DNA of 64,000 nucleotides from Euprymna scolopes (Eukaryota): assembly GCA_053919585.1 (NCBI GenBank), contig CM132789.1. One strand, given 5' to 3'. Of the stretch, positions 2,821-62,738 are shown piece after piece. Every line of letters starts with the position of its first letter. The stretch's first letter is position 1. The translations under genes and the position numbers were made by a program. The notes below the pieces were generated by a model. The model ran no database searches. It was given only the letters and a program-made list of their open reading frames with translations, and was not told where the DNA came from.

Positions 2821-3073
2821 ATAAACAAAAGTGAAAGCATGGCTGTGGCATTTACAGAAGATGACTGCATCCTCATTGTTGATATGGTACTGTATAAGAA
2901 ACTTGATGTCCTGAAGCCCGAAAGCATCAACTTCTGCCATGGTATCTTAGTAAATCAAGAGCCTGCCCAAATATCATGTGATGGATCCATATTGATCATA
3001 ATGGTCAAGATGAATCGAGAAGGAAACAAGGACGATGAAATTTTTTGCACGGTTATATGGAATATTTCAAAAA
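2821..3073 (+). CDS. Exon of the WD40-like gene (INKSESMAVAFTEDDCILIVD...VIWNISK)
   Basis: T-rich tract plus ctag acceptor at 2820; weak gtaaaa donor whose phase 1 matches the next exon. Confidence 0.6.
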
Positions 3074-4579
3074 GTAAAAAAAACATACTACTTCTATAAC
3101 ACCAATGTTATTCTATGGACTTCTCCCCCCTCCCTCATCTACAGACAAGATACCCGACAATGCATTAATAGAGCAAAAGTATAAGAAATGAGATTAGTAA
3201 AACGACAACGGTTGGAAGTGGGAGGGCTCGCCGAGATCTTTTGAACTCTTAAGACAGGAAGATGCCTCACAGTTGGTGGTCAGTTTCTGAATAGTCAGCT
3301 GGGAGGGAGTGACAGGACAAACACGGAAGGAGGCAGTTTTTATTTATCAGGTGTTGCAGTGACTAAAACAAAAGACCGGACATAGGATTTCCAATTCTGA
3401 GTCAATAAATGTAGGTGTCAGAGTTAGTTTACAGACAGTTTTAAGTTTGGAACAGTTGACAACAGTTGGTCCCTCAAGAGAGATCAGAGAGATTGGAATG
3501 AAATTCGGGTGAGAGCAGATAGAGCTTTAGCAGATGTGGAGATGAACTTATCAACTGATCAACAAACATACCTCGACAGATAGCTATCAACAGACAATGT
3601 TTGGGGATCCTTTTTCATACACACTCAGAGACCAATTGATTTATACACAAGTTTATGAATTTGCATGGTTTTATTTTTTATACTTGTAACCCAATGCTTG
3701 CACTCTCGGCAACCGTCAATGTGAGAAATGACAACATAGCCAAAATAGAAAATGAAGGAGAAGAAAACCAAATGTTTCTGATTTACAATGGCTTCAATAT
3801 AATAACAGTACCATGATCAAGTGTATGTGCAGAAACAAACTAGGATAAAGAATCACTTCAACTTGATATTGGTGGGATTTGCAATGTCTTACACGTTCAG
3901 TAACTCAGGTAGTTTGGTCATGTACTGCATGCCATCTCCTGCATCAATTCCATAACACGCTTGGATACTAGGGTGCATAGCAGATCAAGTAAAGCCTTGC
4001 TTGAGTGCATAGGAAGTGATTTGACTGCATGCAACAGGACTGATATCAACTGTTTTGATTGAGTCACGTGGAGCATATGCATGAGACTTTGCCTGGTGGT
4101 ACTCACCCAGATTTCAGAACTGCATCTTAAATACTAAAATTGGAGGAGGAGGAGGAGGAGGAGGAGGAAGATTATGATCATGATGATGGTTGACTTTCTA
4201 GCATCCAATTTTTTTTTTAAATTCCTTTCTGAAGCAGGTGAAGTGCTCTTTTGGTGGACAATCTCCTAGCGATGACGTCCCAATAAAAAACACTGAACCC
4301 CATCCCCTCACTGGGTTGACCTCAGGAATATAAGAATGTTGCCTAACTGAAAGAAATGACTAGCAAAGAAACTTCATCAAACTTTAGGTTATAGCAGTTT
4401 AAATGTTGGGGGCCTTTGTGGAAAGTCTGGTGAGATAGTTGAGTTCCTTGAAAGAAGACGCATTGGCTTATATTGTATACAAGAAACTTGACAGAAAGGT
4501 AAATCTGTCAGAAATAGCCCACAAACACACACTAGCATGTAAAATGGATGTTAAACAGAAGAAGAAGAAGAAGAAGAAG

Positions 4580-4612
<33 letters not shown>

Positions 4613-7600
4613 ACATTTTAATGTCATAATATGCCATGTTTTGTACTGGTGTCAAAAATGTGAAAGGTTTTCTTCTTCCTTGCATAGTCCCAAATCATCA
4701 CGGGGTTCACAGATGCTATTTTATTTCCTTCAGTCAAATTTCTGACCAGGGTGTATACTGGATATTTTGCTCTTTATGACCCCAGGCAACATCGGGTAAA
4801 CTTCCTAGCTTCAAACATAGAATGTATGAAAACAATCCTCAGACCATTTTTGTACTAACGAGAGTCATTACAGCCATTATCAAATTAGCACCAAGACAGG
4901 CGTGAGCCAGAGTTATTAACAAAATACATGTCATCATATTGAGGTGTGCTTATAAAACAAAGACTGTTGGGTATTCATGACTGAAAATTGGTGGACAAGA
5001 CAGAAGTGTGTCAGGTGGTATTTTGAAGTGAGTGAGTACCTTATACCATTTATGGCAAAAAATATTGCATGTTTTCATTTTAAATGTTTTCAGAGGAAAG
5101 CCAGTGTTATCTGTTTGATGAGGACTACCATGAAAGGTACAAGGGCAGGAGTGTTGACGTTGTGTCTGCCACTTTAATGCAAAGTGATGAGGCTGTGTTA
5201 TCCACACATGATGACTACATCATCCGAGTGTTTGCAACATCAGGTAATTTTATAGCAGTAACTGCAACTTTCTTTATTCATAAATAAGCTTGGAGGAGGT
5301 GACTCTACTTTTTCCCTCTCTGTAATCTATGTCCATTGCTTCTCCTCCTCTGACTGTCTCTATTGTTTCTCTTTTTCCACCAGGGTTTTTTTTTTTTTTT
5401 ATCACTGTCGTGTCCAGAGAAATGGGTTGTCGGAATCATGGGATATTTGAATAATAAGTAAACAAGCTCATTTTAGGTTAAATATTATTTATCACGGTTG
5501 AAACACAAATTATAGTTACAGTACTATATTCCCTTGTTAGTGCAGACTGCAGAGCCACCATAGTGTCCATTTTCCCTGGAACTCTCGAGTCTTTATCTTT
5601 TTATTTATCTAAGGGCATTAACTCTTTCTTCCTTTATTCAAGTTATTTCCCCTTTAACTTTTGATCGCTGTAACAGTTACCCTCATTGTTTTTTAAGTTA
5701 AATTAAAATTTGATCCTTGGTAATTATTTCTAATTAAACCACCTAATTTATATGTTTTCTTTAAAGAAAAATAGAAAGTGGACGTTCGGTTTACTTCCGG
5801 TATCCTTGTAACTTTCACTTTCCTTATTTTGTCCTTTAGTTCTCACATTCCATGAGCATTGTTTCTAAGAAAGGGTGAAGAATTGCTGTTTTCTGGAATA
5901 TATGTATCTAACACTTATTATTAGCTAGTTTTTATCTTTAAGTAATATCTTTTTTAGCTCTTTACATCAAGTGGCTTCACGCCTTGTCTGGAACAATTTT
6001 CACAAAATCCTAGAATAACGAACATCTGTAAAAGTCTGAGGAAGCTACAGACGGCCAAAAAAACGGCCGGGTAGCTGAAACAATAATGTAACTTAACAGA
6101 AAGATACGGTAATAAAAAATAAAACGCATATTTGCTCTACAACAGTATTGAGCACTTTCTTCAGTTTCTATTAATTATCATTTCCACTAAATATATATAT
6201 ATTATATTAGCTGAAACAAACGTTTGAGCCCTCTACGAGTAGCGGACGAATGTTTATTTAAATAATCGTTCGGACAGGTTAATTTCGGCCACCGATTCCG
6301 TAGTCAAGGGGGTAGGACTGCCGACGGTCATCACGACGGTTCTAGGTTCGATCCTCGGCTTGGGAGAGGTGTTAGTCTAGCGGCACTGATGAGTTGTGAT
6401 ACAACGAAACAGGTCTGTATGTCGATGACTAAAATATATTTTATAAAGCTCCCCTCTTTGGTAGAGCACTCTCGTAAATTATCTTACTCGCTACTTAATT
6501 TAGCTGAAATAATGCGAAGCTCGCGATTTGTTTACAAACAAACGTTTGAGCCCTCTACGAGTAGCGGACGAATGTTTATTTAAATAATCGTTCGGACAGG
6601 TTAATTTCGGCCACCGATTCCGTAGTCAAGGGGGTAGGACTGCCGACGGTCATCACGACGGTTCTAGGTTCGATCCTCGGCTTGGGAGAGGTGTTAGTCT
6701 AGCGGCACTGATGAGTTGTGATACAACGAAACAGGTCTGTATGTCGATGACTAAAATATATTTTATAAAGCTCCCCTCTTTGGTAGAGCACTCTCGTAAA
6801 TTATCTTACTCGCTACTTAATGTAGCTGAAATAATGCGAAGCTCGCGATTTGTTTACAAACAAACGTTTGAGCCCTCTACGAGTAGCGGACGAATGTTTA
6901 TTTAAATAATCGTTCGGACAGGTTAATTTCGGCCACCGATTCCGTAGTCAAGGGGGTAGGACTGCCGACGGTCATCACGACGGTTCTAGGTTCGATCCTC
7001 GGCTTGGGAGAGGTGTTAGTCTAGCGGCACTGATGAGTTGTGATACAACGAAACAGGTCTGTATGTCGATGACTAAAATATATTTTATAAAGCTCCCCTC
7101 TTTGGTAGAGCACTCTCGTAAATTATCTTACTCGCTACTTAATTTAGCTGAAATAATGCGAAGCTCGCGATTTGTTTACAAACAAACGTTTGAGCCCTCT
7201 ACGAGTAGCGGACGAATGTTTATTTAAATAATCGTTCGGACAGGTTAATTTCGACCACCGATTCCGTAGTCAAGGGGGTAGGACTGCCGACGGTCATCAC
7301 GACGGTTCTAGGTTCGATCCTCGGCTTGGGAGAGGTGTTAGTCTAGCGGCACTGATGAGTTGTGATACAACGAAACAGGTCTGTATGTCGATGACTAAAA
7401 TATATTTTATAAAGCTCCCCTCTTTGGTAGAGCACTCTCGTAAATTATCTTACTCGCTACTTAATTTAGCTGAAATAATGCGAAGCTCGCGATTTGTTTA
7501 CAAACAAACGTTTGAGCCCTCTACGAGTAGCGGACGAATGTTTATTTAAATAATCGTTCGGACAGGTTAATTTCGGCCACCGATTCCGTAGTCAAGGGGG

Positions 7601-8044
7601 TAGGACTGCCGACGGTCATCACGACGGTTCTAGGTTCGATCCTCGGCTTGGGAGAGGTGTTAGTCTAGCGGCACTGATGAGTTGTGATACAACGAAACAG
7701 GTCTGTATGTCGATGACTAAAATATATTTTATAAAGCTCCCCTCTTTGGTAGAGCACTCTCGTAAATTATCTTACTCGCTACTTAATTTAGCTGAAATAA
7801 TGCGAAGCTCGCGATTTGTTTACAAACAAACGTTTGAGCCCTCTACGAGTAGCGGACGAATGTTTATTTAAATAATCGTTCGGACAGGTTAATTTCGGCC
7901 ACCGATTCCGTAGTCAAGGGGGTAGGACTGCCGACGGTCATCACGACGGTTCTAGGTTCGATCCTCGGCTTGGGAGAGGTGTTAGTCTAGCGGCACTGAT
8001 GAGTTGTGATACAACGAAACAGGTCTGTATGTCGATGACTAAAA

Positions 8045-8113
<69 letters not shown>

Positions 8114-18539: not shown

Positions 18540-20835
18540 CAATTTTTCAATCAAATTGATTTATAGCCTGCTTCTGTTGGCGACGCATTGTGGTGCACTG
18601 GAAGGAAGCTTTACATGCCACCCTGCAAGACAGATGATGAGGGGAGGTCCTGTCACAATTTCTCCATTGCTTATGACCTAATGCAGATTGATCACAAACC
18701 CGCCTCTGTGCCCAACATCGATGGTCAGTATGCGAGTCTCCAAGATCTTTTTCTCACAACTTTCCCTGAGCTATATTCATTCGGTCTCTGCTGGGATCTT
18801 CAGACCACTCACTTGTCTCAGATAAGGTAAAAATAAAATGTAGACCCCTACGTACCACTCCATCGTACAGCATATCGATACTCTATGGCTGACTGGGATA
18901 GCTTCCATACATTTATATCAGATCTACCTCTGCATTCCATGTTTAAAAAAATGTGTCCTCTATAGTATCAGACCTGACTGAATGGTTAATTGTAGGTATA
19001 GACCACCTCATACCCTCCAAAAAAATTCCAGCAAAAACCTAACAGCCAGTCGTGGTTCTCTCCAGAATGTGCTGCTGCCAATGCGCACAGAAATCACTAT
19101 TTCCATTACTTCCAACGTAATAGATGTACTGAGACTAAAGCCGCCTTTAAGACTGCCAGCAACCTCTGTAAAAGAGTAATAAAGAACATGAGAGAGTTGT
19201 ATGCTCAGTCCGTCAAGTCCAAAGTAGCTGAGCAGCTGATTGGTTCCCACCAGTTTTGGCAAATAACAAACAAGATCCTGAATAGAAGCATGTGCTCTGT
19301 CTCAACCATCATCAATGGACCTGAGGTAATCTTGTCAGCATCGGACAAAGCCAAACTCTTTGCCAAGAACTTTGCAGCTAATTCTACTCTATGTGATCAG
19401 GGCTACTAAACCCCCATATTTTCTCCCGTGTCTGAAAACACGCTATGCAACATAAAAATATCTGTGCTAATCAAAAAAAAACCTTGATTCCAGTAAATCA
19501 ACTGGCCCTGATGGTATTCCAATTATAGTGCTCAAAAAGCTTCAACCAGAATTAGCTCCCATACTTGCAAAGCTGTTTAAGCGTTGTCTTAAGAAATGCT
19601 TCCCATCACCCTGGAAAACCTCATCAGTATGCCCTGTATTTAAGAATTCAGATGATCGGTCATCTTCCTCTCAGTACAGACGAATAAGTCTCCTGTGCGT
19701 CATGAGTAAGTCACTTGAATCAGTGTTAAATCGAGTAGTAGTCAACCACCTCAGCAAAGATAACCTTCTTAGTGACATGCAATATGGTTGTCGTTCTGCC
19801 AGATCTACAGCAGACGTGCTAACAGTTATATTTCACAGGGTTAGTGAATCTCTCGATGGAGGCTTCATTTCTAGGACAATTGCTCTTGACATATCAAAGG
19901 CCTTTGATAGAGTATGGCATAAAGGTCTACTCCACAAAATCTCCAGCTATGGTATAGCTAGAAATGTCTTTTCAATTATTAAATCATTTCTGATAGGTTC
20001 ATAAGAGTAATAGTTGATGGGTAGAAATCAGAAGCTCACAGTATTAATGCTGGAGTACCTCAGAGGTTCATCCTGGGCCCAACTCTCTTCCTGATCTACA
20101 TCAATGATTTCCCAAATCACATTCTTAAATCATTCATAGACATTTATGCAGACGACACTACCATCTATGGTAACACTTCAAAGGCCATAAATGAACAAGT
20201 TCTCTCTGATCTTGTGCATGTGGTGCAATGGGGAAAGAGGTGGCTGGTTAATTTTAATGCATCTAAAACCAAGCTTCTATCTTTACATCACCAATGCTCT
20301 GATCCCATCTGACATCAATCGAAATGAATGATTCTCATCTTGGGGAGGCTCCAGCTTCCGAGTCTGACCATTACTCCAGCTCTGGGATGGAACACGTGCA
20401 TCAAATCTGTTGCCAAGGTCGCTGGAAAAATGGTGGGATCATTCTACTGCTTTGGTAGATATCTCACTACTGATGCAATTCTCTACCTATATATAAGCTA
20501 AGTACGTCCAAGGATGGAGAACTGTTCCCATATCTGGGCAGGAGCTGCTAGAAGTAGCTGATCCTGCCTTGACAGAGTTCAAAATAGACTTCGTAGCTTG
20601 ATGAACAAAGTTTCTTTCTTAGAACTGCATGCCTGTGGAACTCTGTTCCATTTTCTTGCTTTCCAACTGATGACAAGTTCAACATGAACAAGTTCTTGAT
20701 GAGATGTCTCCTGTAGTAACCCAATTTACAAAATTTCCACTACTAACGATGACTATGATATTGTCCTATTGACTACCATACACTCATTAACCTCGAATGG
20801 CCTCCAGGCCTTTATAAGTGATGACCTCTTTGTAA
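18540..20835 (+). mobile_element. Decayed LINE (CR1/L2/Jockey-group) ORF2, from the end of the endonuclease through RT to the 3' tail
   Basis: STGPDGI, YRRISLL, QYGCRSARST, ALDISKAFDRVWH, GVPQ, IYADDT motifs with frameshifts and stops. Confidence 0.92.
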
Positions 20836-59800: not shown

Positions 59801-62738
59801 CCAAACTGTAGAATGTAACAGCATCATATTGAGTAAGTTGGCTGCGGAAAGGAAAGAAAATTGAAATGAACAAAATTAACTTCTGTGTTGATGAAACTAT
59901 CAGGCAATATCTTGTATGTTTCTTGCTTATAAACAACTTTAATACACATTGAATTATTTTTATTTACTATTAATGAAATATTTGTTAAAATCAAAATTAA
60001 ATATAGGAAAACCAAAACAAATTTTTAAAATCACATTTAATAAAAGAAATTGTAAACACCAAACTTGCAGAGTTCGAAAGTACACAGTTTAACTTAGATC
60101 CATACAGTTCTAAAAATTACCACCCAGACTTGTATGGTTCCAAATATTAACACTTGCACCCATATCATTCCAAATATTAACACTTGGACCCATACCGTTC
60201 CAAATATTAACACTTGGACCCATACCGTTCCAAATATTAACACTTGGACCCATATCATTCCAAATATTAACACTTGGACCCATACCATTCCAAATATTAA
60301 CACTTGGACCCATACCGTTCCAAATATTAACACTTGGACCCATACCGTTCCAAATATTAACACTTGGACCCATACCGTTCCAAATATTAACACTTGGACC
60401 CATATCATTCCAAATATTAACACTTGGACCCATATCATTCCAAATATTAACACTTGGACCCATACCATTCCAAATATTAACACTTGGACCCATACCATTC
60501 CAAATATTAACACTTGGACCCATACTGTTCCAAATATTAACACTTGGACCCATACCATTCCAAATATTAACACTTGTCCCATACGATTCTAAAAATTAAC
60601 ACTTAGATCCATACGATTCTAAAAATTAACACTTAGACCCATACGATTCCAAAAATTAACACTTAGATCCATACGATTCTAAAAATTAACACTTAGATCC
60701 ATACGATTCTAAAAATTAACACTTAGACCCATACCATTTCAAAAATCAACACTTGACTTTAAATGCTTCTAATATTCAGATTGCCTGTTGATTCTTCTTA
60801 GATAAAAATATCCGACTAGGATTCTCACAAGTCTGACTTTGATTAATTTCACAACCTCTGACTCCACAACTCCGGTAAACACAACTATATTTTATAAACT
60901 ATTTTTGTCAAAGCCCAGCAGTCAGCAAAATGTCTCCACCCTGAGACAACGCCAAATAAATACAGCTTTTATTCAATAATATGCTCCATTATTTTGAATG
61001 AGTAGATTTAACCTGTTATTTTTAGATCAATTCCTATAAACTCGTTGATCATTCCAGAGCTGATTAAATTATCTTAGATTATGGAAGTTAGATTTCATAC
61101 TAATGATTTAATAAGTACCAACTAAAATTATAGATTTGTGACCTCAAGTGAAATCTGTAGTAACATTTAGTTGTGTTAAAAGCATTATTTTATATGTGCT
61201 GTTACATTACATAAGGAAGAGGAACTTTCTGATAGAAATTTATCCAACGTGTAAAGAAAGTTACGTAATAGCAGGAATTTGTTGTGGCGAAGATACCATA
61301 CAGATTCTTATCCTTGGGAGTCTGATGCTGAAGTAAATGAACATCTTTTCTTTTTTAAATCTAAATAAATCAAGAAGAAATTAAGATGTAGCCCAGAAGC
61401 AAATAATGGTGTTGATTGCTGTTCTTTTTAATTGCTTTCATTATTACAATCACAAGGGGGGGGGAGGCTACAATGACTACTACTTCTACAAAAAGATACA
61501 ATGAACGATTCAGCAGACTACTTACATATCAACAATTCTGTTTCTGTCCATGAGTCAACACAGTTATTTATAATGGTACAAAGAGTTAGCTGATCAAAAC
61601 ATTGCAAACTGGACAAGTGATTGTCTTGCTGTTGTAAACTCATAAATATTACATTTTGGGGTGGCCTTCAAGATATATATCTCTCCCTCCCATGGCGGGA
61701 TGATGGGACACAAGGGTCAGAAAATGGGATTAAACAGCGATTTCCCTAGCAGAAAAGCACTTTGACCTGCAAAAAATGCAGCCCAGTCAACATTCTCTAG
61801 TAGGAGTGCCTCAGGTGATTAGCAATAAATTAACTCTTTCTCACAAAAGCTAAGCCTGGGAGGGTGGACCTCCAAGAACTCCATAGGACCAGAGGCATAC
61901 TTTAGTCAACAGGAGACAAATCATCTCAACAATGACCTAGACTCTGTTGGTTTTGGTGTCGAGGGAAAAAAACCATGGCTGAAGGCTTAAAACATCTCAC
62001 CTTTCCCAGATGAGCGAGATCAGAATAAGCTTACACGCGAAAAAAGTGACATGCATAGGAATGCATACATAGAAAACTCAAACTGGACAGGAACGAACCA
62101 TGTGACTAAAGAGCAAGCTGCAAGTTTGTTTTTTTTTTAACTGGGATTTGGGAAGAATTCATTCAGAAACAAATCAAAATAGATGTATGAAAATATTGTC
62201 TGAAAAATCACCAGCAGGTTAAGGCTCTTTCTCTTTACCTGAATCATGTATTTAAAATATTCACCCACTATCTCATACATTTTAACTGAGAGATCTTTTT
62301 AAGATTCTGACTGTTCCTTGAAGTACAGTTGTTTGAATCTCTCTTGCACTTGGTTCACTAGGTATGGTTAGGCACAAATTTGCTTGTGTTGATTATTTGT
62401 AATTAACAAGAAATCAGTTAGAGAAAATAAAGAATCATAACCAGACACGTTCTACATCCAGCTGAGCGTAACGGACAAGCCCCAAAAATTCTTCAGATAA
62501 ATTAAATCTAATCAACATACATTTTAAATGTGTCATTTCTTTCGATGCCAAGAATATTTGGATTTTAGCAACTCAGTTTATTGACTTACCATGAAATTGT
62601 GCGTAAAGTTTTCAAGTCGGATACAAGTTCCTTAGTTTTGCTGTTTAGCTGATTCCATATTGGGTCAAGCTGCTGTCGTACAATCAGATCAAACGATCTT
62701 CCAATTGTATTCTCAACAGATACTTCATCGAGGTCAAG
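21168..62738 (-). CDS. ERCC4: DNA repair endonuclease XPF (ERCC4), 5'-incomplete multi-exon CDS; 15 exons visible, 1905 nt = 634 aa + stop
   Basis: Exons with GT-AG ends and compatible phases: 62590-62738, 59788-59841, 57183-57252, 56242-56323, 54644-54801, 51869-51955, 48475-48585, 43950-44138, 39515-39652, 36439-36567, 34008-34094, 30590-30763, 28899-29039, 25889-25984, 21168-21407. They join into one open frame with XPF motifs ([100 protein letters not shown]). Confidence 0.97.
22395..23270 (-). mobile_element. 3' fragment of the same LINE family
   Basis: [27 protein letters not shown]-type motif; shared 3' tail CTCGAGTGGCCT...TAAGTGGTGACTCCTTTGT. Confidence 0.85.
24300..24610 (-). mobile_element. 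Internal fragment of the same LINE family
   Basis: Reverse complement of about 18980-19255. Confidence 0.8.
25198..25626. mobile_element. Foldback MITE (partial copies near 45600 and 56860)
   Basis: AATGTTACCAAAGGCAAGATAAGTTACTTTTCTA / TAGAAAAGTAACTTACCTCGCCTTTGGTAACATT. Confidence 0.75.
25889..25984 (-). CDS. ERCC4: ERCC4 exon ([32 protein letters not shown])
   Basis: ttag acceptor, gtacag donor; YNPGPQ motif. Confidence 0.93.
26800..27165. repeat. 126-bp tandem repeat, ~3 copies
   Basis: TTTTTATTCAAAT...GACCTAGATATGAAAAAGATGTCAAGTTCATG repeated at ~26801, 26927 and 27053. Confidence 0.9.
27990..28330 (+). mobile_element. Dispersed SINE-like repeat (second copy ~49060-49335, fragment ~23770-23840)
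   Basis: Shared GGTACTACCACTCCGGGTCA...GGACCTGGGAGCAATGG block. Confidence 0.75.
28899..29039 (-). CDS. ERCC4: ERCC4 exon ([47 protein letters not shown])
   Basis: ccag acceptor, gtagac donor; conserved XPF block. Confidence 0.96.
30590..30763 (-). CDS. ERCC4: ERCC4 exon, catalytic motif ([30 protein letters not shown]...LLIEFD)
   Basis: GDxnERKx3D nuclease signature; ctag acceptor, gtaagt donor. Confidence 0.97.
31920..32200 (+). mobile_element. LINE RT fragment
   Basis: YINDLP...TYADDSSLY...[12 protein letters not shown]. Confidence 0.75.
32227..32660 (+). mobile_element. Non-autonomous Helitron-like element (related copy ~443-760; analogous element ~41850-42268)
   Basis: Starts A|TC, (GTCT)n near the 5' end, 3' GC hairpin then CTAG|T. 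Confidence 0.55.
32971..33010 (+). ncRNA. Degenerate minimal type I hammerhead (Penelope-like terminus relic)
   Basis: taca-CCAATGA-A-GACTGA/TCGGTC-GAAA-ATTA-tgta; core mutated from CTGATGA. Confidence 0.45.
33235..33600. mobile_element. Mariner-like end fragment (related pieces at ~43050-43290 and ~63250-63780)
   Basis: Shared TCTACATAGTCACCACCATTCTCAATGCA block and TTCCAAAAGTAA terminus. Confidence 0.6.
34008..34094 (-). CDS. ERCC4: ERCC4 exon, start of nuclease domain ([29 protein letters not shown])
   Basis: tttag acceptor, gtaagt donor; canonical IVDMREF motif. Confidence 0.96.
34609..35086. mobile_element. Foldback MITE with ~120-bp TIRs
   Basis: GTACTTGTACAGTTTAATCAAGACATTAAAAA... 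mirrored at the right end; lies beside a mariner relic (~34250-34580). Confidence 0.8.
36439..36567 (-). CDS. ERCC4: ERCC4 exon ([18 protein letters not shown]...[14 protein letters not shown])
   Basis: aacag acceptor, gtttgt donor; MVxPEEREG and RKGG motifs. Confidence 0.92.
36660..36905. mobile_element. Same family, shortened inverted pair
   Basis: GGAATCTGCACAGAAATTTGAACAGAACC block and GAGAACAGTAGTCTGAATAATCCAAATAAT terminus. Confidence 0.55.
39515..39652 (-). CDS. ERCC4: ERCC4 exon ([46 protein letters not shown])
   Basis: tttag acceptor, gtgagt donor; highly conserved XPF block. Confidence 0.96.
40085..40630. mobile_element. Degenerate foldback element
   Basis: GGCGGACCTGAACAAT / ATTGTTCAGGTCCACC termini and internal mirror symmetry. 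Confidence 0.6.
43365..43830 (-). mobile_element. RTE-like LINE 3' fragment
   Basis: GKVKENLE / WYGH-like region and (GAT)n tail, similar to 11400-11745. Confidence 0.55.
43950..44138 (-). CDS. ERCC4: ERCC4 exon (QEVDDF...DAYYGIL...IHPI...[25 protein letters not shown])
   Basis: gtaagt donor; GAGCAG tandem acceptor; PRYVxLYD...FVRQLE motif. Confidence 0.95.
44272..44653. mobile_element. Degenerate foldback element
   Basis: CAACGCATTTCAGGTGAAAACAC / TGTCTTCACCTGAAATGTGTTG termini. Confidence 0.6.
46675..47345 (-). mobile_element. Internally deleted LINE: 5' UTR and endonuclease start fused to the 3' tail
   Basis: [33 protein letters not shown] joined directly to the 3'-end sequence seen at ~20615-20830. 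Confidence 0.8.
48475..48585 (-). CDS. ERCC4: ERCC4 exon with a basic NLS-like stretch ([12 protein letters not shown]...VTLTQM...)
   Basis: cacag acceptor, gtaaaa donor; TLTQM motif of the XPF linker. Confidence 0.87.
49060..49335 (+). mobile_element. Dispersed SINE-like repeat, copy of 27990-28265
   Basis: High similarity to the 27990 copy. Confidence 0.75.
50514..50803. mobile_element. Tc1/mariner-type MITE, 290 bp
   Basis: 26-bp TIRs CAGGGTGGAACGATAAAATTGTCGCC (24/26 match) with TA on both sides. Confidence 0.85.
51869..51955 (-). CDS. ERCC4: ERCC4 exon ([29 protein letters not shown])
   Basis: tttcag acceptor, gtaaga donor, phase 0/0. Confidence 0.85.
52000..52745 (+). mobile_element. 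Decayed LINE RT and 3' fragments
   Basis: [16 protein letters not shown]-like motifs; 3' region similar to other copies. Confidence 0.7.
53000..53690 (-). mobile_element. LINE 3' fragment
   Basis: [11 protein letters not shown]...LLDRVQKR...[10 protein letters not shown]. Confidence 0.85.
54644..54801 (-). CDS. ERCC4: ERCC4 exon ([24 protein letters not shown]...[17 protein letters not shown])
   Basis: tttcag acceptor, gtatgt donor; LExxPKW and DDRTCxQL motifs. Confidence 0.95.
56242..56323 (-). CDS. ERCC4: ERCC4 exon ([27 protein letters not shown])
   Basis: tttag acceptor, gtaagg donor; resembles NARARVY of XPF; phase 0/1. Confidence 0.88.
57183..57252 (-). CDS. ERCC4: ERCC4 exon ([24 protein letters not shown])
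   Basis: gtgag donor, AAG acceptor; conserved NSGWLFLDS. Confidence 0.9.
58000..58600 (-). mobile_element. RTE-like RT fragment
   Basis: [13 protein letters not shown] motif. Confidence 0.6.
59788..59841 (-). CDS. ERCC4: ERCC4 exon ([17 protein letters not shown])
   Basis: ccgcag acceptor, gtaatt donor; QYDxVTF motif; phase 2/2 fits its neighbours. Confidence 0.92.
60090..60760. repeat. 30-bp minisatellite, ~22 copies (CCATACCGTTCCAAATATTAACACTTGGAC)
   Basis: Direct 30-bp periodicity with variant sub-blocks. Confidence 0.95.
62590..62738 (-). CDS. ERCC4: ERCC4 exon ([49 protein letters not shown])
   Basis: tttctag acceptor, gtaagt donor; XPF helicase-like region motif LDPxWxQL. Confidence 0.93.

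What the first reader, a model, noticed from the sequence alone, without database searches (positions are those of the whole stretch)
6214..8055. Tandem array of six hammerhead ribozymes in a 322-bp unit: a candidate retrozyme / circular-RNA-producing element
Seen in sequence: each unit holds a complete type I hammerhead. It has stem I (TTAGTC/GACTAA, an internal loop, CGGCA/TGTCG), the CUGAUGA core, stem II (GTTGT/ACAAC), GAAA, a short stem III (ACAG-gt-CTGT) and a GUA cleavage triplet. Predicted cuts fall after 6419, 6741, 7063, 7385, 7707 and 8029. Established: tandem repeats of a few hundred bp with one type I hammerhead per unit define non-LTR retrozymes and the schistosome SM-alpha, newt satellite 2 and cave-cricket satellites. 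Their multimeric transcripts self-cleave to monomers, and retrozyme monomers can circularise. Inference: this is a non-coding, self-processing mobile RNA giving 322-nt linear or circular monomers. I do not recognise the family, but novelty needs a search.
Basis: partly seen in the sequence, partly recalled or inferred. Interest (0 to 1): 0.93.

Follow-up and report, generated by a model that had tools for sequence, protein, structure and literature searches.

The report
Hammerhead retrozyme array in (TA)n
This is one young insertion of a high-copy, non-coding mobile element whose 322-bp units each carry a self-cutting hammerhead RNA motif; it is a known kind of element, but its copies show unusually clearly how it pastes itself into TA-repeat DNA.

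Summary

Rfam does not call it at its gathering score. A homologous 286-bp family keeps the core and changes the helices only by compensatory pairs.

The family is dispersed: the hammerhead 34-mer occurs 8,082 times in this 5.9-Gb genome. All 32 insertions with a readable 3' end stop at the same unit position, 26 nt past the cut site, against a (TA)n microsatellite. Their 5' ends vary. This is the footprint of target-primed reverse transcription.

All six window units share a variant that no other array carries in more than one unit, which points to repeated copying of one monomer, most simply a circle.

Penelope-like elements in the genome also end in (TA)n but share no sequence with the unit.

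Self-cleavage and circles are not shown: polyA RNA reads show no ends at the cut site.

Verdict: a new member of the animal non-LTR retrozyme class, closest to schistosome SM-alpha. This scan had already followed up a sibling 286-bp family elsewhere in this genome (s1-244821).

The parts
6214..8055 (+). Tandem array, 5.7 units of 322 bp (five full units plus a last partial unit covering unit positions 1-232). The 5' edge may be at 6207.
6372..6432 (+). Hammerhead 1, type I motif, predicted cut after A6419. The same 61-nt motif recurs at 6694-6754, 7016-7076, 7338-7398, 7660-7720 and 7982-8042, with cuts after 6741, 7063, 7385, 7707 and 8029.
   Evidence: weak Rfam alignments in the same register
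6409..6418 (+). Helix III segment ACAGGUCUGU. As a hairpin it gives only 3-4 pairs. Two copies can pair into a 10-bp helix with two G.U pairs (double hammerhead). It repeats every 322 bp.
   Evidence: the 286-bp family has the perfect palindrome ACAGUACUGU
6301..6355 (+). Box A-like (6301-6311, TAGTCAAGGGG) and box B-like (6345-6355, GGTTCGATCCT) motifs just upstream of the hammerhead. This is a degenerate tRNA-like module and a possible Pol III promoter. It repeats in every unit.
   Evidence: Read from the sequence. No tRNA call by ARAGORN or Rfam. The 410-bp sister family has a near-threshold tRNA match in the same position.
8030..8055 (+). 3' terminal 26 nt beyond the last cut site. It ends in the unit's only T4 run followed by ATA. 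This is the invariant 3' end of every insertion with a readable 3' end.
8056..8111 (.). (TA)n microsatellite abutting the 3' end; target or priming site.
6190..6206 (.). (TA)-rich tract abutting the 5' end. It is also the 3' tail of the older upstream element.
6007..6199 (+). Older, unrelated-looking ~195-nt dispersed element with its own type I hammerhead-like motif (CUGAGGA at 6036). The 322 array sits in its (TA)n tail.

Best explanation
The array is one recent insertion of a non-autonomous, non-coding retroelement of the animal non-LTR retrozyme type.

Proposed cycle:
1. Arrays are transcribed, either by read-through or from the box A/B-like module. This step is inferred.
2. The type I hammerhead in each unit cuts after GUA. 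It probably acts as a pair, because helix III is too short alone. This gives 322-nt monomers. Inferred from the motif and its conservation.
3. A monomer is closed into a circle by a host RNA ligase. Inferred by analogy.
4. A reverse transcriptase supplied in trans, most likely from a Penelope-like element, nicks a (TA)n microsatellite. It primes on the UAUA stretch 26 nt downstream of the cut site and copies the template round and round. It stops at a variable point.

The genomic result of step 4 is what the sequence shows directly: arrays with one fixed 3' end, variable 5' ends, (TA)n on the flanks, and units within an array that are copies of one template.
For: Motif:
- Six descriptor matches at the predicted cut sites, none in 100 simulated windows.
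- Weak but correctly registered Rfam hammerhead alignments.

Constraint:
- Against the homologous 286-bp family the hammerhead is 49/61 identical with no indel. The rest of the unit is 54-65% identical with many indels.
- The 12 hammerhead differences are three compensatory pairs (stem II U-A vs C-G, stem I G-C vs U.G, helix III centre GU vs UA), loops and distal stem I. None is in the core.
- Variants inherited from the template are rarer in the hammerhead (8/549 sites) than elsewhere (56/1546 sites), Fisher p=0.009. Changes after insertion are not rarer.
- A locally amplified satellite relative on contig 26 has lost 9 nt of stem I.

Mobility:
- 8,082 exact copies of the hammerhead 34-mer on both strands.
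- Arrays on many contigs, with about 0.1% divergence from the consensus.
- All 32 insertions with a readable 3' end finish at unit position 232 followed by (TA)n. The 5' ends fall at more than 15 different unit positions, mostly against (TA)n.

Single template: variant G113 is in 6/6 window units. In the young subfamily it occurs nowhere else. The three other genomic hits are single units in older arrays.

Partner:
- GIY-YIG/Penelope-like ORFs of up to 806-870 aa are abundant, with 14,709 first-look candidates.
- Two copies examined also end in (TA)n.
- A (TA)n insertion bias of Penelope-like elements is published (PMC8557442).

The life-cycle model is that of PMC7229834.
Against: - No Rfam hammerhead model reaches its gathering score. 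The best is Hammerhead_3 at 18.9-19.2 bits against a cut-off of 48.5.
- The active fold is not the predicted minimum. Monomer: -10.7 vs -14.8 kcal/mol. Double hammerhead: -33.4 vs -36.0 kcal/mol.
- The 322-nt RNA is not unusually structured, z = -1.3.
- In raw polyA RNA-seq no ends pile up at 6419/6420, 58-71% of laid reads run on into unlike flanks, and most reads come from older copies.
- The Penelope-like copies examined share no sequence with the unit, so the partner is named only from the shared target.
- The single-template argument rests on one array.
- Insertions shorter than one unit also exist (L092, L065).
Confidence: 0.8

Rival explanations
1. SM-alpha-style SINE without circles. 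Pol III starts at the box A/B-like module and reads through several units. The linear multimer, ending at the T4 run, is the retrotransposition template. The hammerhead only trims transcripts.
For: - Box A-like and box B-like motifs lie 44 nt apart just upstream of the hammerhead.
- The unit's only T4 run sits at 226-229, at the invariant 3' end.
- The 410-bp sister family has a tRNA match of 27.1 bits in the same place.
Against: - The 286-bp sibling ends its insertions at GACTATA plus (TA)n with no T run at all. The shared feature is therefore a TA-rich priming site, not a terminator.
- tRNA models do not detect the 322 or 286 module.
- This segment is no better conserved than the body of the unit (65% vs 62%).
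- No source array with several G113 units exists in the assembly.
Confidence: 0.13
2. Ordinary satellite DNA. The arrays grew and spread by unequal crossing-over and segmental duplication, and the hammerhead is a relic without a role.
For: A relative forms a satellite of more than 100 kb on contig 26 with 414/418/832-bp periods.
Against: - Thousands of short arrays lie on all large contigs and on both strands.
- Each has the same 3' end and its own unique flanks.
- The satellite copies are exactly the ones with a broken hammerhead.
Confidence: 0.03
3. A DNA-level mobile element, for example a Helitron-like or TA-targeting transposon that carries a tandem repeat.
For: The insertions lie in TA-rich targets.
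Against: - There are no terminal inverted repeats and no Helitron-type ends.
- One end is fixed and the other is truncated at arbitrary positions of the unit. This is the pattern of reverse transcription from a 3' start.
- No transposase ORF is nearby.
Confidence: 0.02

Closest known systems
Animal non-LTR retrozymes (Cervera and de la Pena 2020, PMC7229834; Li et al. 2026 preprint, 10.64898/2026.07.22.740005)
   Same: - Tandem units of 150-450 bp, each with one type I hammerhead.
- GC below 50%.
- No LTR, PBS, PPT or ORF.
- Many dispersed arrays.
- Co-occurrence with Penelope-like elements.
- Short helix III that implies dimeric cleavage, as in amphibian families.
   Different: - A box A/B-like module sits directly upstream of the ribozyme.
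- The hammerhead sequence falls below the Rfam cut-off.
- The insertion anatomy is defined here: a fixed 3' end 26 nt past the cut site, a (TA)n target and 5' truncation.
- RNA circles and cleavage were not tested for this family.
Schistosome SM-alpha / Sj-alpha SINE-like elements (Ferbeyre et al. 1998, as cited in PMC8490949 and PMC6155905)
   Same: - A unit of about 335 bp.
- A type I hammerhead with an internal loop in stem I.
- Both tandem and dispersed copies; described as SINE-like.
   Different: - No sequence relationship was tested.
- That SM-alpha carries Pol III boxes is from my own knowledge; the 1998 paper was not held.
- The SM-alpha ribozyme is fast as a monomer. This one has a helix III too short to stand alone.
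Newt satellite 2 and cave-cricket pDo500 hammerhead satellites
   Same: Tandem repeats with type I hammerheads. The newt motif works as a double hammerhead with an extended helix III (PMC6155905).
   Different: Those are described mainly as large satellites. Here most copies are short dispersed arrays with retroposition footprints. Only the contig 26 relative is satellite-like, and its ribozyme is decayed.
Penelope-like element pseudo-LTRs and tails
   Same: Hammerhead-bearing repeats, partial tandem structure, and a (TA)n insertion bias (PMC8557442; L074 and L075).
   Different: - No RT/GIY-YIG ORF.
- No sequence similarity to the Penelope-like copies examined.
- No inverted truncated partner next to the arrays.

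Membership tests
Animal non-LTR retrozyme | Short tandem repeat unit of about 150-450 bp in multiple copies | tested here: met
   322 bp, 5.7 copies. Arrays of 1.4 to more than 20 units occur elsewhere.
Animal non-LTR retrozyme | A type I hammerhead in every unit (conserved core, three helices, stem I open) | tested here: met
   Descriptor matches in all six units. Compensatory changes against the 286-bp family. Caveat: Rfam scores lie below the gathering cut-off.
Animal non-LTR retrozyme | Non-coding, no LTR/PBS/PPT, GC below 50% | tested here: met
   GC 43.8%. The longest stop-free run is 105 codons on a multimer. There are no long ORFs in the window. PBS and PPT were not searched for explicitly.
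Animal non-LTR retrozyme | Dispersed copies with signs of retrotransposition | tested here: met
   8,082 hammerhead copies. All 32 insertions with a readable 3' end share one 3' end; 5' ends vary; (TA)n flanks.
Animal non-LTR retrozyme | Self-cleavage of transcripts at the hammerhead | not testable with these tools
   Needs in vitro transcription. PolyA RNA-seq shows no ends at 6419/6420, which is uninformative for non-polyadenylated products.
Animal non-LTR retrozyme | Unit-length linear and circular RNAs in tissues | tested here: inconclusive
   - RNA-type assemblies hold a closed 322-nt cycle, and reads join 6535 to 6214. Tandem DNA gives the same joints.
- An rRNA-depleted assembly has depth 41-1219 against 6.9 for the neighbouring repeat.
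tRNA-derived SINE (SM-alpha-like) | tRNA-derived head with functional box A and box B | tested here: inconclusive
   Box-like motifs are present. There is no tRNA call by ARAGORN or Rfam at E up to 10.
tRNA-derived SINE (SM-alpha-like) | Single-unit insertions that begin at the transcription start | tested here: not met
   5' ends are scattered over the unit, and most insertions hold more than one unit.
Rfam Hammerhead_1 (RF00163) | Score at or above 34 bits | tested here: not met
   No match at gathering score. The model consensus is sequence-specific in stem II and loop II, and in the GUC triplet. Other families in this genome pass at 42-57 bits.

The most novel reading that the evidence does not exclude
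The copies of this family carry three footprints:
- one invariant 3' end at a UAUA stretch 26 nt past the ribozyme cut site;
- a (TA)n target on the flanks;
- six units in the window array that all carry a variant unique to that array.

Together these would be direct sequence-level evidence that animal retrozymes integrate by target-primed, rolling-circle reverse transcription of a single monomeric circular RNA. The enzyme would be a Penelope-type one that prefers TA repeats. Until now this step has been only a proposed model.
Probability: 0.4. Interest if true: 0.6.

Novelty: new member of a known kind. Interest (0 to 1): 0.42.

Why it matters
Retrozymes are a recently recognised route to abundant circular RNAs in animals. 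How they get back into DNA, and which enzyme does it, is still a model rather than a result.

This family is useful for three reasons:
- It is very young (about 0.1% divergence) and has thousands of copies.
- Its insertion junctions are clean.
- It has older and decayed relatives in the same genome for comparison.

That makes it a good natural system for two tests: rolling-circle reverse transcription, and the Penelope-like partner.

For annotation, it shows that thousands of ribozyme-bearing repeats in a large, probably mollusc, genome escape Rfam thresholds. They would likely be filed as unclassified repeats.

Tried and rejected
- Rfam at gathering score: nothing.
- Rfam in E-value mode: only sub-threshold hammerhead hits plus chance hits such as STnc280 and Pestivirus 3'UTR on the TA repeat.
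- ARAGORN and the Rfam tRNA model on the 322 and 286 families: no tRNA.
- Fold of the 322-nt monomer: z = -1.3, so no special compactness.
- MAFFT alignment of hammerheads from five families misaligned the 3' half, so I did not use it for pair counts. I compared the helices by hand and by script instead.
- BLAST of the unit against two Penelope-like copies: only 10-16-nt chance matches.
- Search for a second array-wide private variant (L059, 72A): it proved to be a subfamily marker with 24 copies, so it adds nothing.
- Host gene: the ORF at 2839-3099 gives a sub-threshold KAP/armadillo-type hit (19.1 bits). The genome's real KAP gene is on contig 13. The claim that the array lies in an intron of a plus-strand gene stays untested.
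- Read ends at the cut site in polyA RNA-seq: none.
- The depth drop after 6413 in the rRNA-depleted assembly is explained by unitig breaks at a subfamily variant and does not indicate cleavage.
- Ferbeyre et al. 1998 is not held.
- Dfam and Repbase could not be searched.

Full report
**Observation**

Tandem Repeats Finder reports 6214-8055 with period 322, 5.7 copies and 99% matches. The repeat finder gives six copies spaced 322 bp. The five full units differ by 0-2 bases.

Each unit reads, 5' to 3': TTAGTC, UAG, CGGCA, CUGAUGA, GUUGU-GAU-ACAAC, GAA, ACAG-GU-CUGU, A, UGUCG, AU, GACUAA. This is a type I hammerhead with all core nucleotides, G10.1-C11.1, A15.1-U16.1 and a GUA triplet.

A descriptor script found exactly six matches in the window. 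The cut nucleotides are 6419, 6741, 7063, 7385, 7707 and 8029. It found none in 100 simulated 64-kb sequences.
- Loop II is GAU.
- The 5' edge may be 6207.
- The six copies count as one motif, not six independent ones.

**Rfam**

Nothing reaches a gathering score. In E-value mode the best match is Hammerhead_3 at 18.9-19.2 bits against a cut-off of 48.5.

The Hammerhead_1 model has a sequence-specific stem II, loop II and GUC triplet. This explains the miss. Other tandem families in the same genome pass it at 42-57 bits. One example is a 410-bp family whose hammerhead follows a near-threshold tRNA match of 27.1 bits.

**The family in the genome**

The genome has 5.9 Gb in 925 contigs. Runs labelled mollusc or invertebrate metagenome hold the sequence. 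The host is hidden.

The unit occurs in tandem arrays on many contigs at 99% identity. The 34-nt hammerhead core, with loop GAU or GAA, occurs 8,082 times: 4,277 forward and 3,805 reverse, with zero for the control.

In 87 units from 22 arrays I found only about 26 single-unit changes, mostly C-to-T or G-to-A. The youngest subfamily is therefore about 0.1% diverged.

**Insertion anatomy (the main result)**

I examined 33 separate insertions, young and old (84-99.9% identity).
- All 32 with a readable 3' end finish at unit position 232 (window 8055) and are followed by (TA)n. The exception is L065, an 83%-identical fragment that breaks off at unit 218 against a CA repeat.
- Their 5' ends fall at more than 15 different unit positions. 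About three quarters of these abut (TA)n as well.
- Lengths run from 0.6 to more than 20 units.

A fixed 3' end with arbitrary 5' truncation is the footprint of reverse transcription started at the target.

The 3' end lies 26 nt past the cut site. A cleaved linear monomer primed at its own 3' end therefore cannot be the template. The 3' end coincides with the unit's only T4 run followed by AUA. The 286-bp sibling family ends at GACUAUA plus (TA)n without any T run. The common feature is thus a TA-rich stretch able to pair with a nicked (TA)n target.

**Is the hammerhead under selection?**

The 286-bp family (L055; earlier finding s1-244821) is clearly homologous.
- The hammerhead is 49/61 identical with no indel. 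The other segments are 54-65% identical with many indels.
- The 12 hammerhead differences are: U-A to C-G in stem II; G-C to U.G in stem I; GU to UA at the centre of helix III; one base in loop II; one in the stem I internal loop; and four at the distal end of stem I. None is in the core.
- In older arrays, variants shared by all units of an array were inherited from the template. These are rarer in the hammerhead (8/549 sites, at three non-helical or peripheral positions) than elsewhere (56/1546 sites), Fisher p=0.009. Single-unit changes, which arose after insertion, are not rarer there (4.9% vs 3.4%).
- A relative that grew into a satellite of more than 100 kb on contig 26 has lost 9 nt of stem I and often G16.2.

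The ribozyme is therefore kept in the lineage that transposes and decays in copies that merely sit in DNA or amplify locally.

**Dimer**

As a hairpin, helix III has 3-4 pairs. Two copies can form a 10-bp helix. This double hammerhead is the predicted minimum for the 286 dimer (-40.2 kcal/mol). It is not the minimum for the 322 dimer (-33.4 vs -36.0 kcal/mol). The monomer fold is also not the minimum (-10.7 vs -14.8 kcal/mol). Dimeric action is known for newt and amphibian retrozyme hammerheads (PMC6155905, PMC7229834).

**One template for all six units**

All six window units carry G at unit position 113, where the family has T. Genome-wide this variant occurs nine times: the six here, and three single units inside older GAA-loop arrays.

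No source array with several G113 units exists in the assembly. A multimeric transcript from a source array therefore does not explain it. Repeated copying of one monomer does, and a circle is the simplest form of that. This is a single case. A second candidate turned out to be a subfamily marker.

**Partner**

GIY-YIG matches number 14,709 first-look candidates. They have open frames up to 806-870 aa and often lie head to head, as Penelope-like elements do. Two copies examined end in (TA)n but share no sequence with the unit.

The ~195-nt element just upstream of the array (6007-6199) has its own hammerhead-like motif and at least 2,542 candidate copies, often with an inverted truncated partner. 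The 322 array sits in its (TA)n tail.

A (TA)n bias of Penelope-like elements is published (PMC8557442). A Penelope origin of animal retrozymes has been proposed. The link here rests on the shared target only.

Box A-like and box B-like motifs lie 44 nt apart upstream of the ribozyme. However, no tRNA model detects them. The segment is no better conserved than the body of the unit. Insertions do not start at a fixed 5' end. I rate this as possible but unsupported.

**RNA**

RNA-type assemblies hold the unit as a closed 322-nt cycle, while the unique flanks have zero depth.

In three raw polyA runs:
- 165-325 reads lie on the unit, mostly at 95-99% identity.
- 58-71% run on into unlike flanks.
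- The first-mate strand bias is 5:1, 1.7:1 and 2:1.
- There is no pile-up of ends at 6419/6420.

An rRNA-depleted assembly shows depth 41-1219 on the unit against 6.9 on the neighbouring repeat. Transcription is evident. Cleavage and circles are not shown.

**Verdict**

This is a new member of the known class of animal non-LTR retrozymes, closest in design to schistosome SM-alpha. Its value lies in the clean insertion footprints. A sibling family in this genome was already followed up by this scan with the same conclusion.

Noticed in passing
window 6007-6199: A ~195-nt dispersed element with a type I hammerhead-like motif (CUGAGGA at 6036, long stem II, ACA/UGU helix III, GUA). It has at least 2,542 candidate copies at 94-98% identity, often with an inverted truncated copy head to head, and it ends in (TA)n.
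   Followed up: partly
G000 contig 26, about 197,700-322,800 (sample L066): A satellite of more than 100 kb with alternating 414/418-bp units (832-bp higher-order period). It derives from a relative of this family. Its hammerhead has lost 9 nt of stem I and often G16.2.
   Followed up: partly
L035-L042 (G000 contig 8, 10,432,194 onward) and contig 3 near 89.84 Mb: A 410-bp tandem family with a hammerhead that passes Rfam Hammerhead_1 (53 bits). It has a perfect 8-nt helix III palindrome and a near-threshold tRNA match directly upstream. One array starts right after (TA)n.
   Followed up: partly
L025:2823-2883 and L059:2779-2839 (minus strand): A further hammerhead family with a stable 5-bp helix III and a GUC triplet. 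It lies next to 322-family arrays.
   Followed up: no
L074, L075 and many places listed: A young, very homogeneous Penelope-like family: GIY-YIG hits of identical score and ORFs of about 806 aa. A degenerate hammerhead-like stretch lies about 100 nt from its 3' end, and its ends abut (TA)n.
   Followed up: partly
window 6209-6560 vs 6019-6190, RNA runs X39, X45, X46: The 322 unit and the upstream element have opposite first-mate strand biases in polyA RNA-seq, although both hammerheads are on the plus strand. Library strandedness is unknown, so I could not tell which RNA strand dominates.
   Followed up: no
window 19528-20004 (+): A 158-aa ORF with a reverse transcriptase match (RVT_1, 46.7 bits). 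It is a fragment of another retroelement.
   Followed up: no
window 2839-3099 (+): An 86-aa ORF with a sub-threshold KAP/armadillo-type match (19.1 bits); possibly an exon. The genome's true KAP gene is on contig 13.
   Followed up: partly
window 60138-60755: A 30-bp tandem repeat of 20.6 copies, with overlapping ORFs on both strands.
   Followed up: no
22 arrays of the young subfamily: About half of the single-unit changes are C-to-T or G-to-A. Some are at CpG sites (for example unit 143/144), as expected if the inserted DNA is methylated.
   Followed up: no
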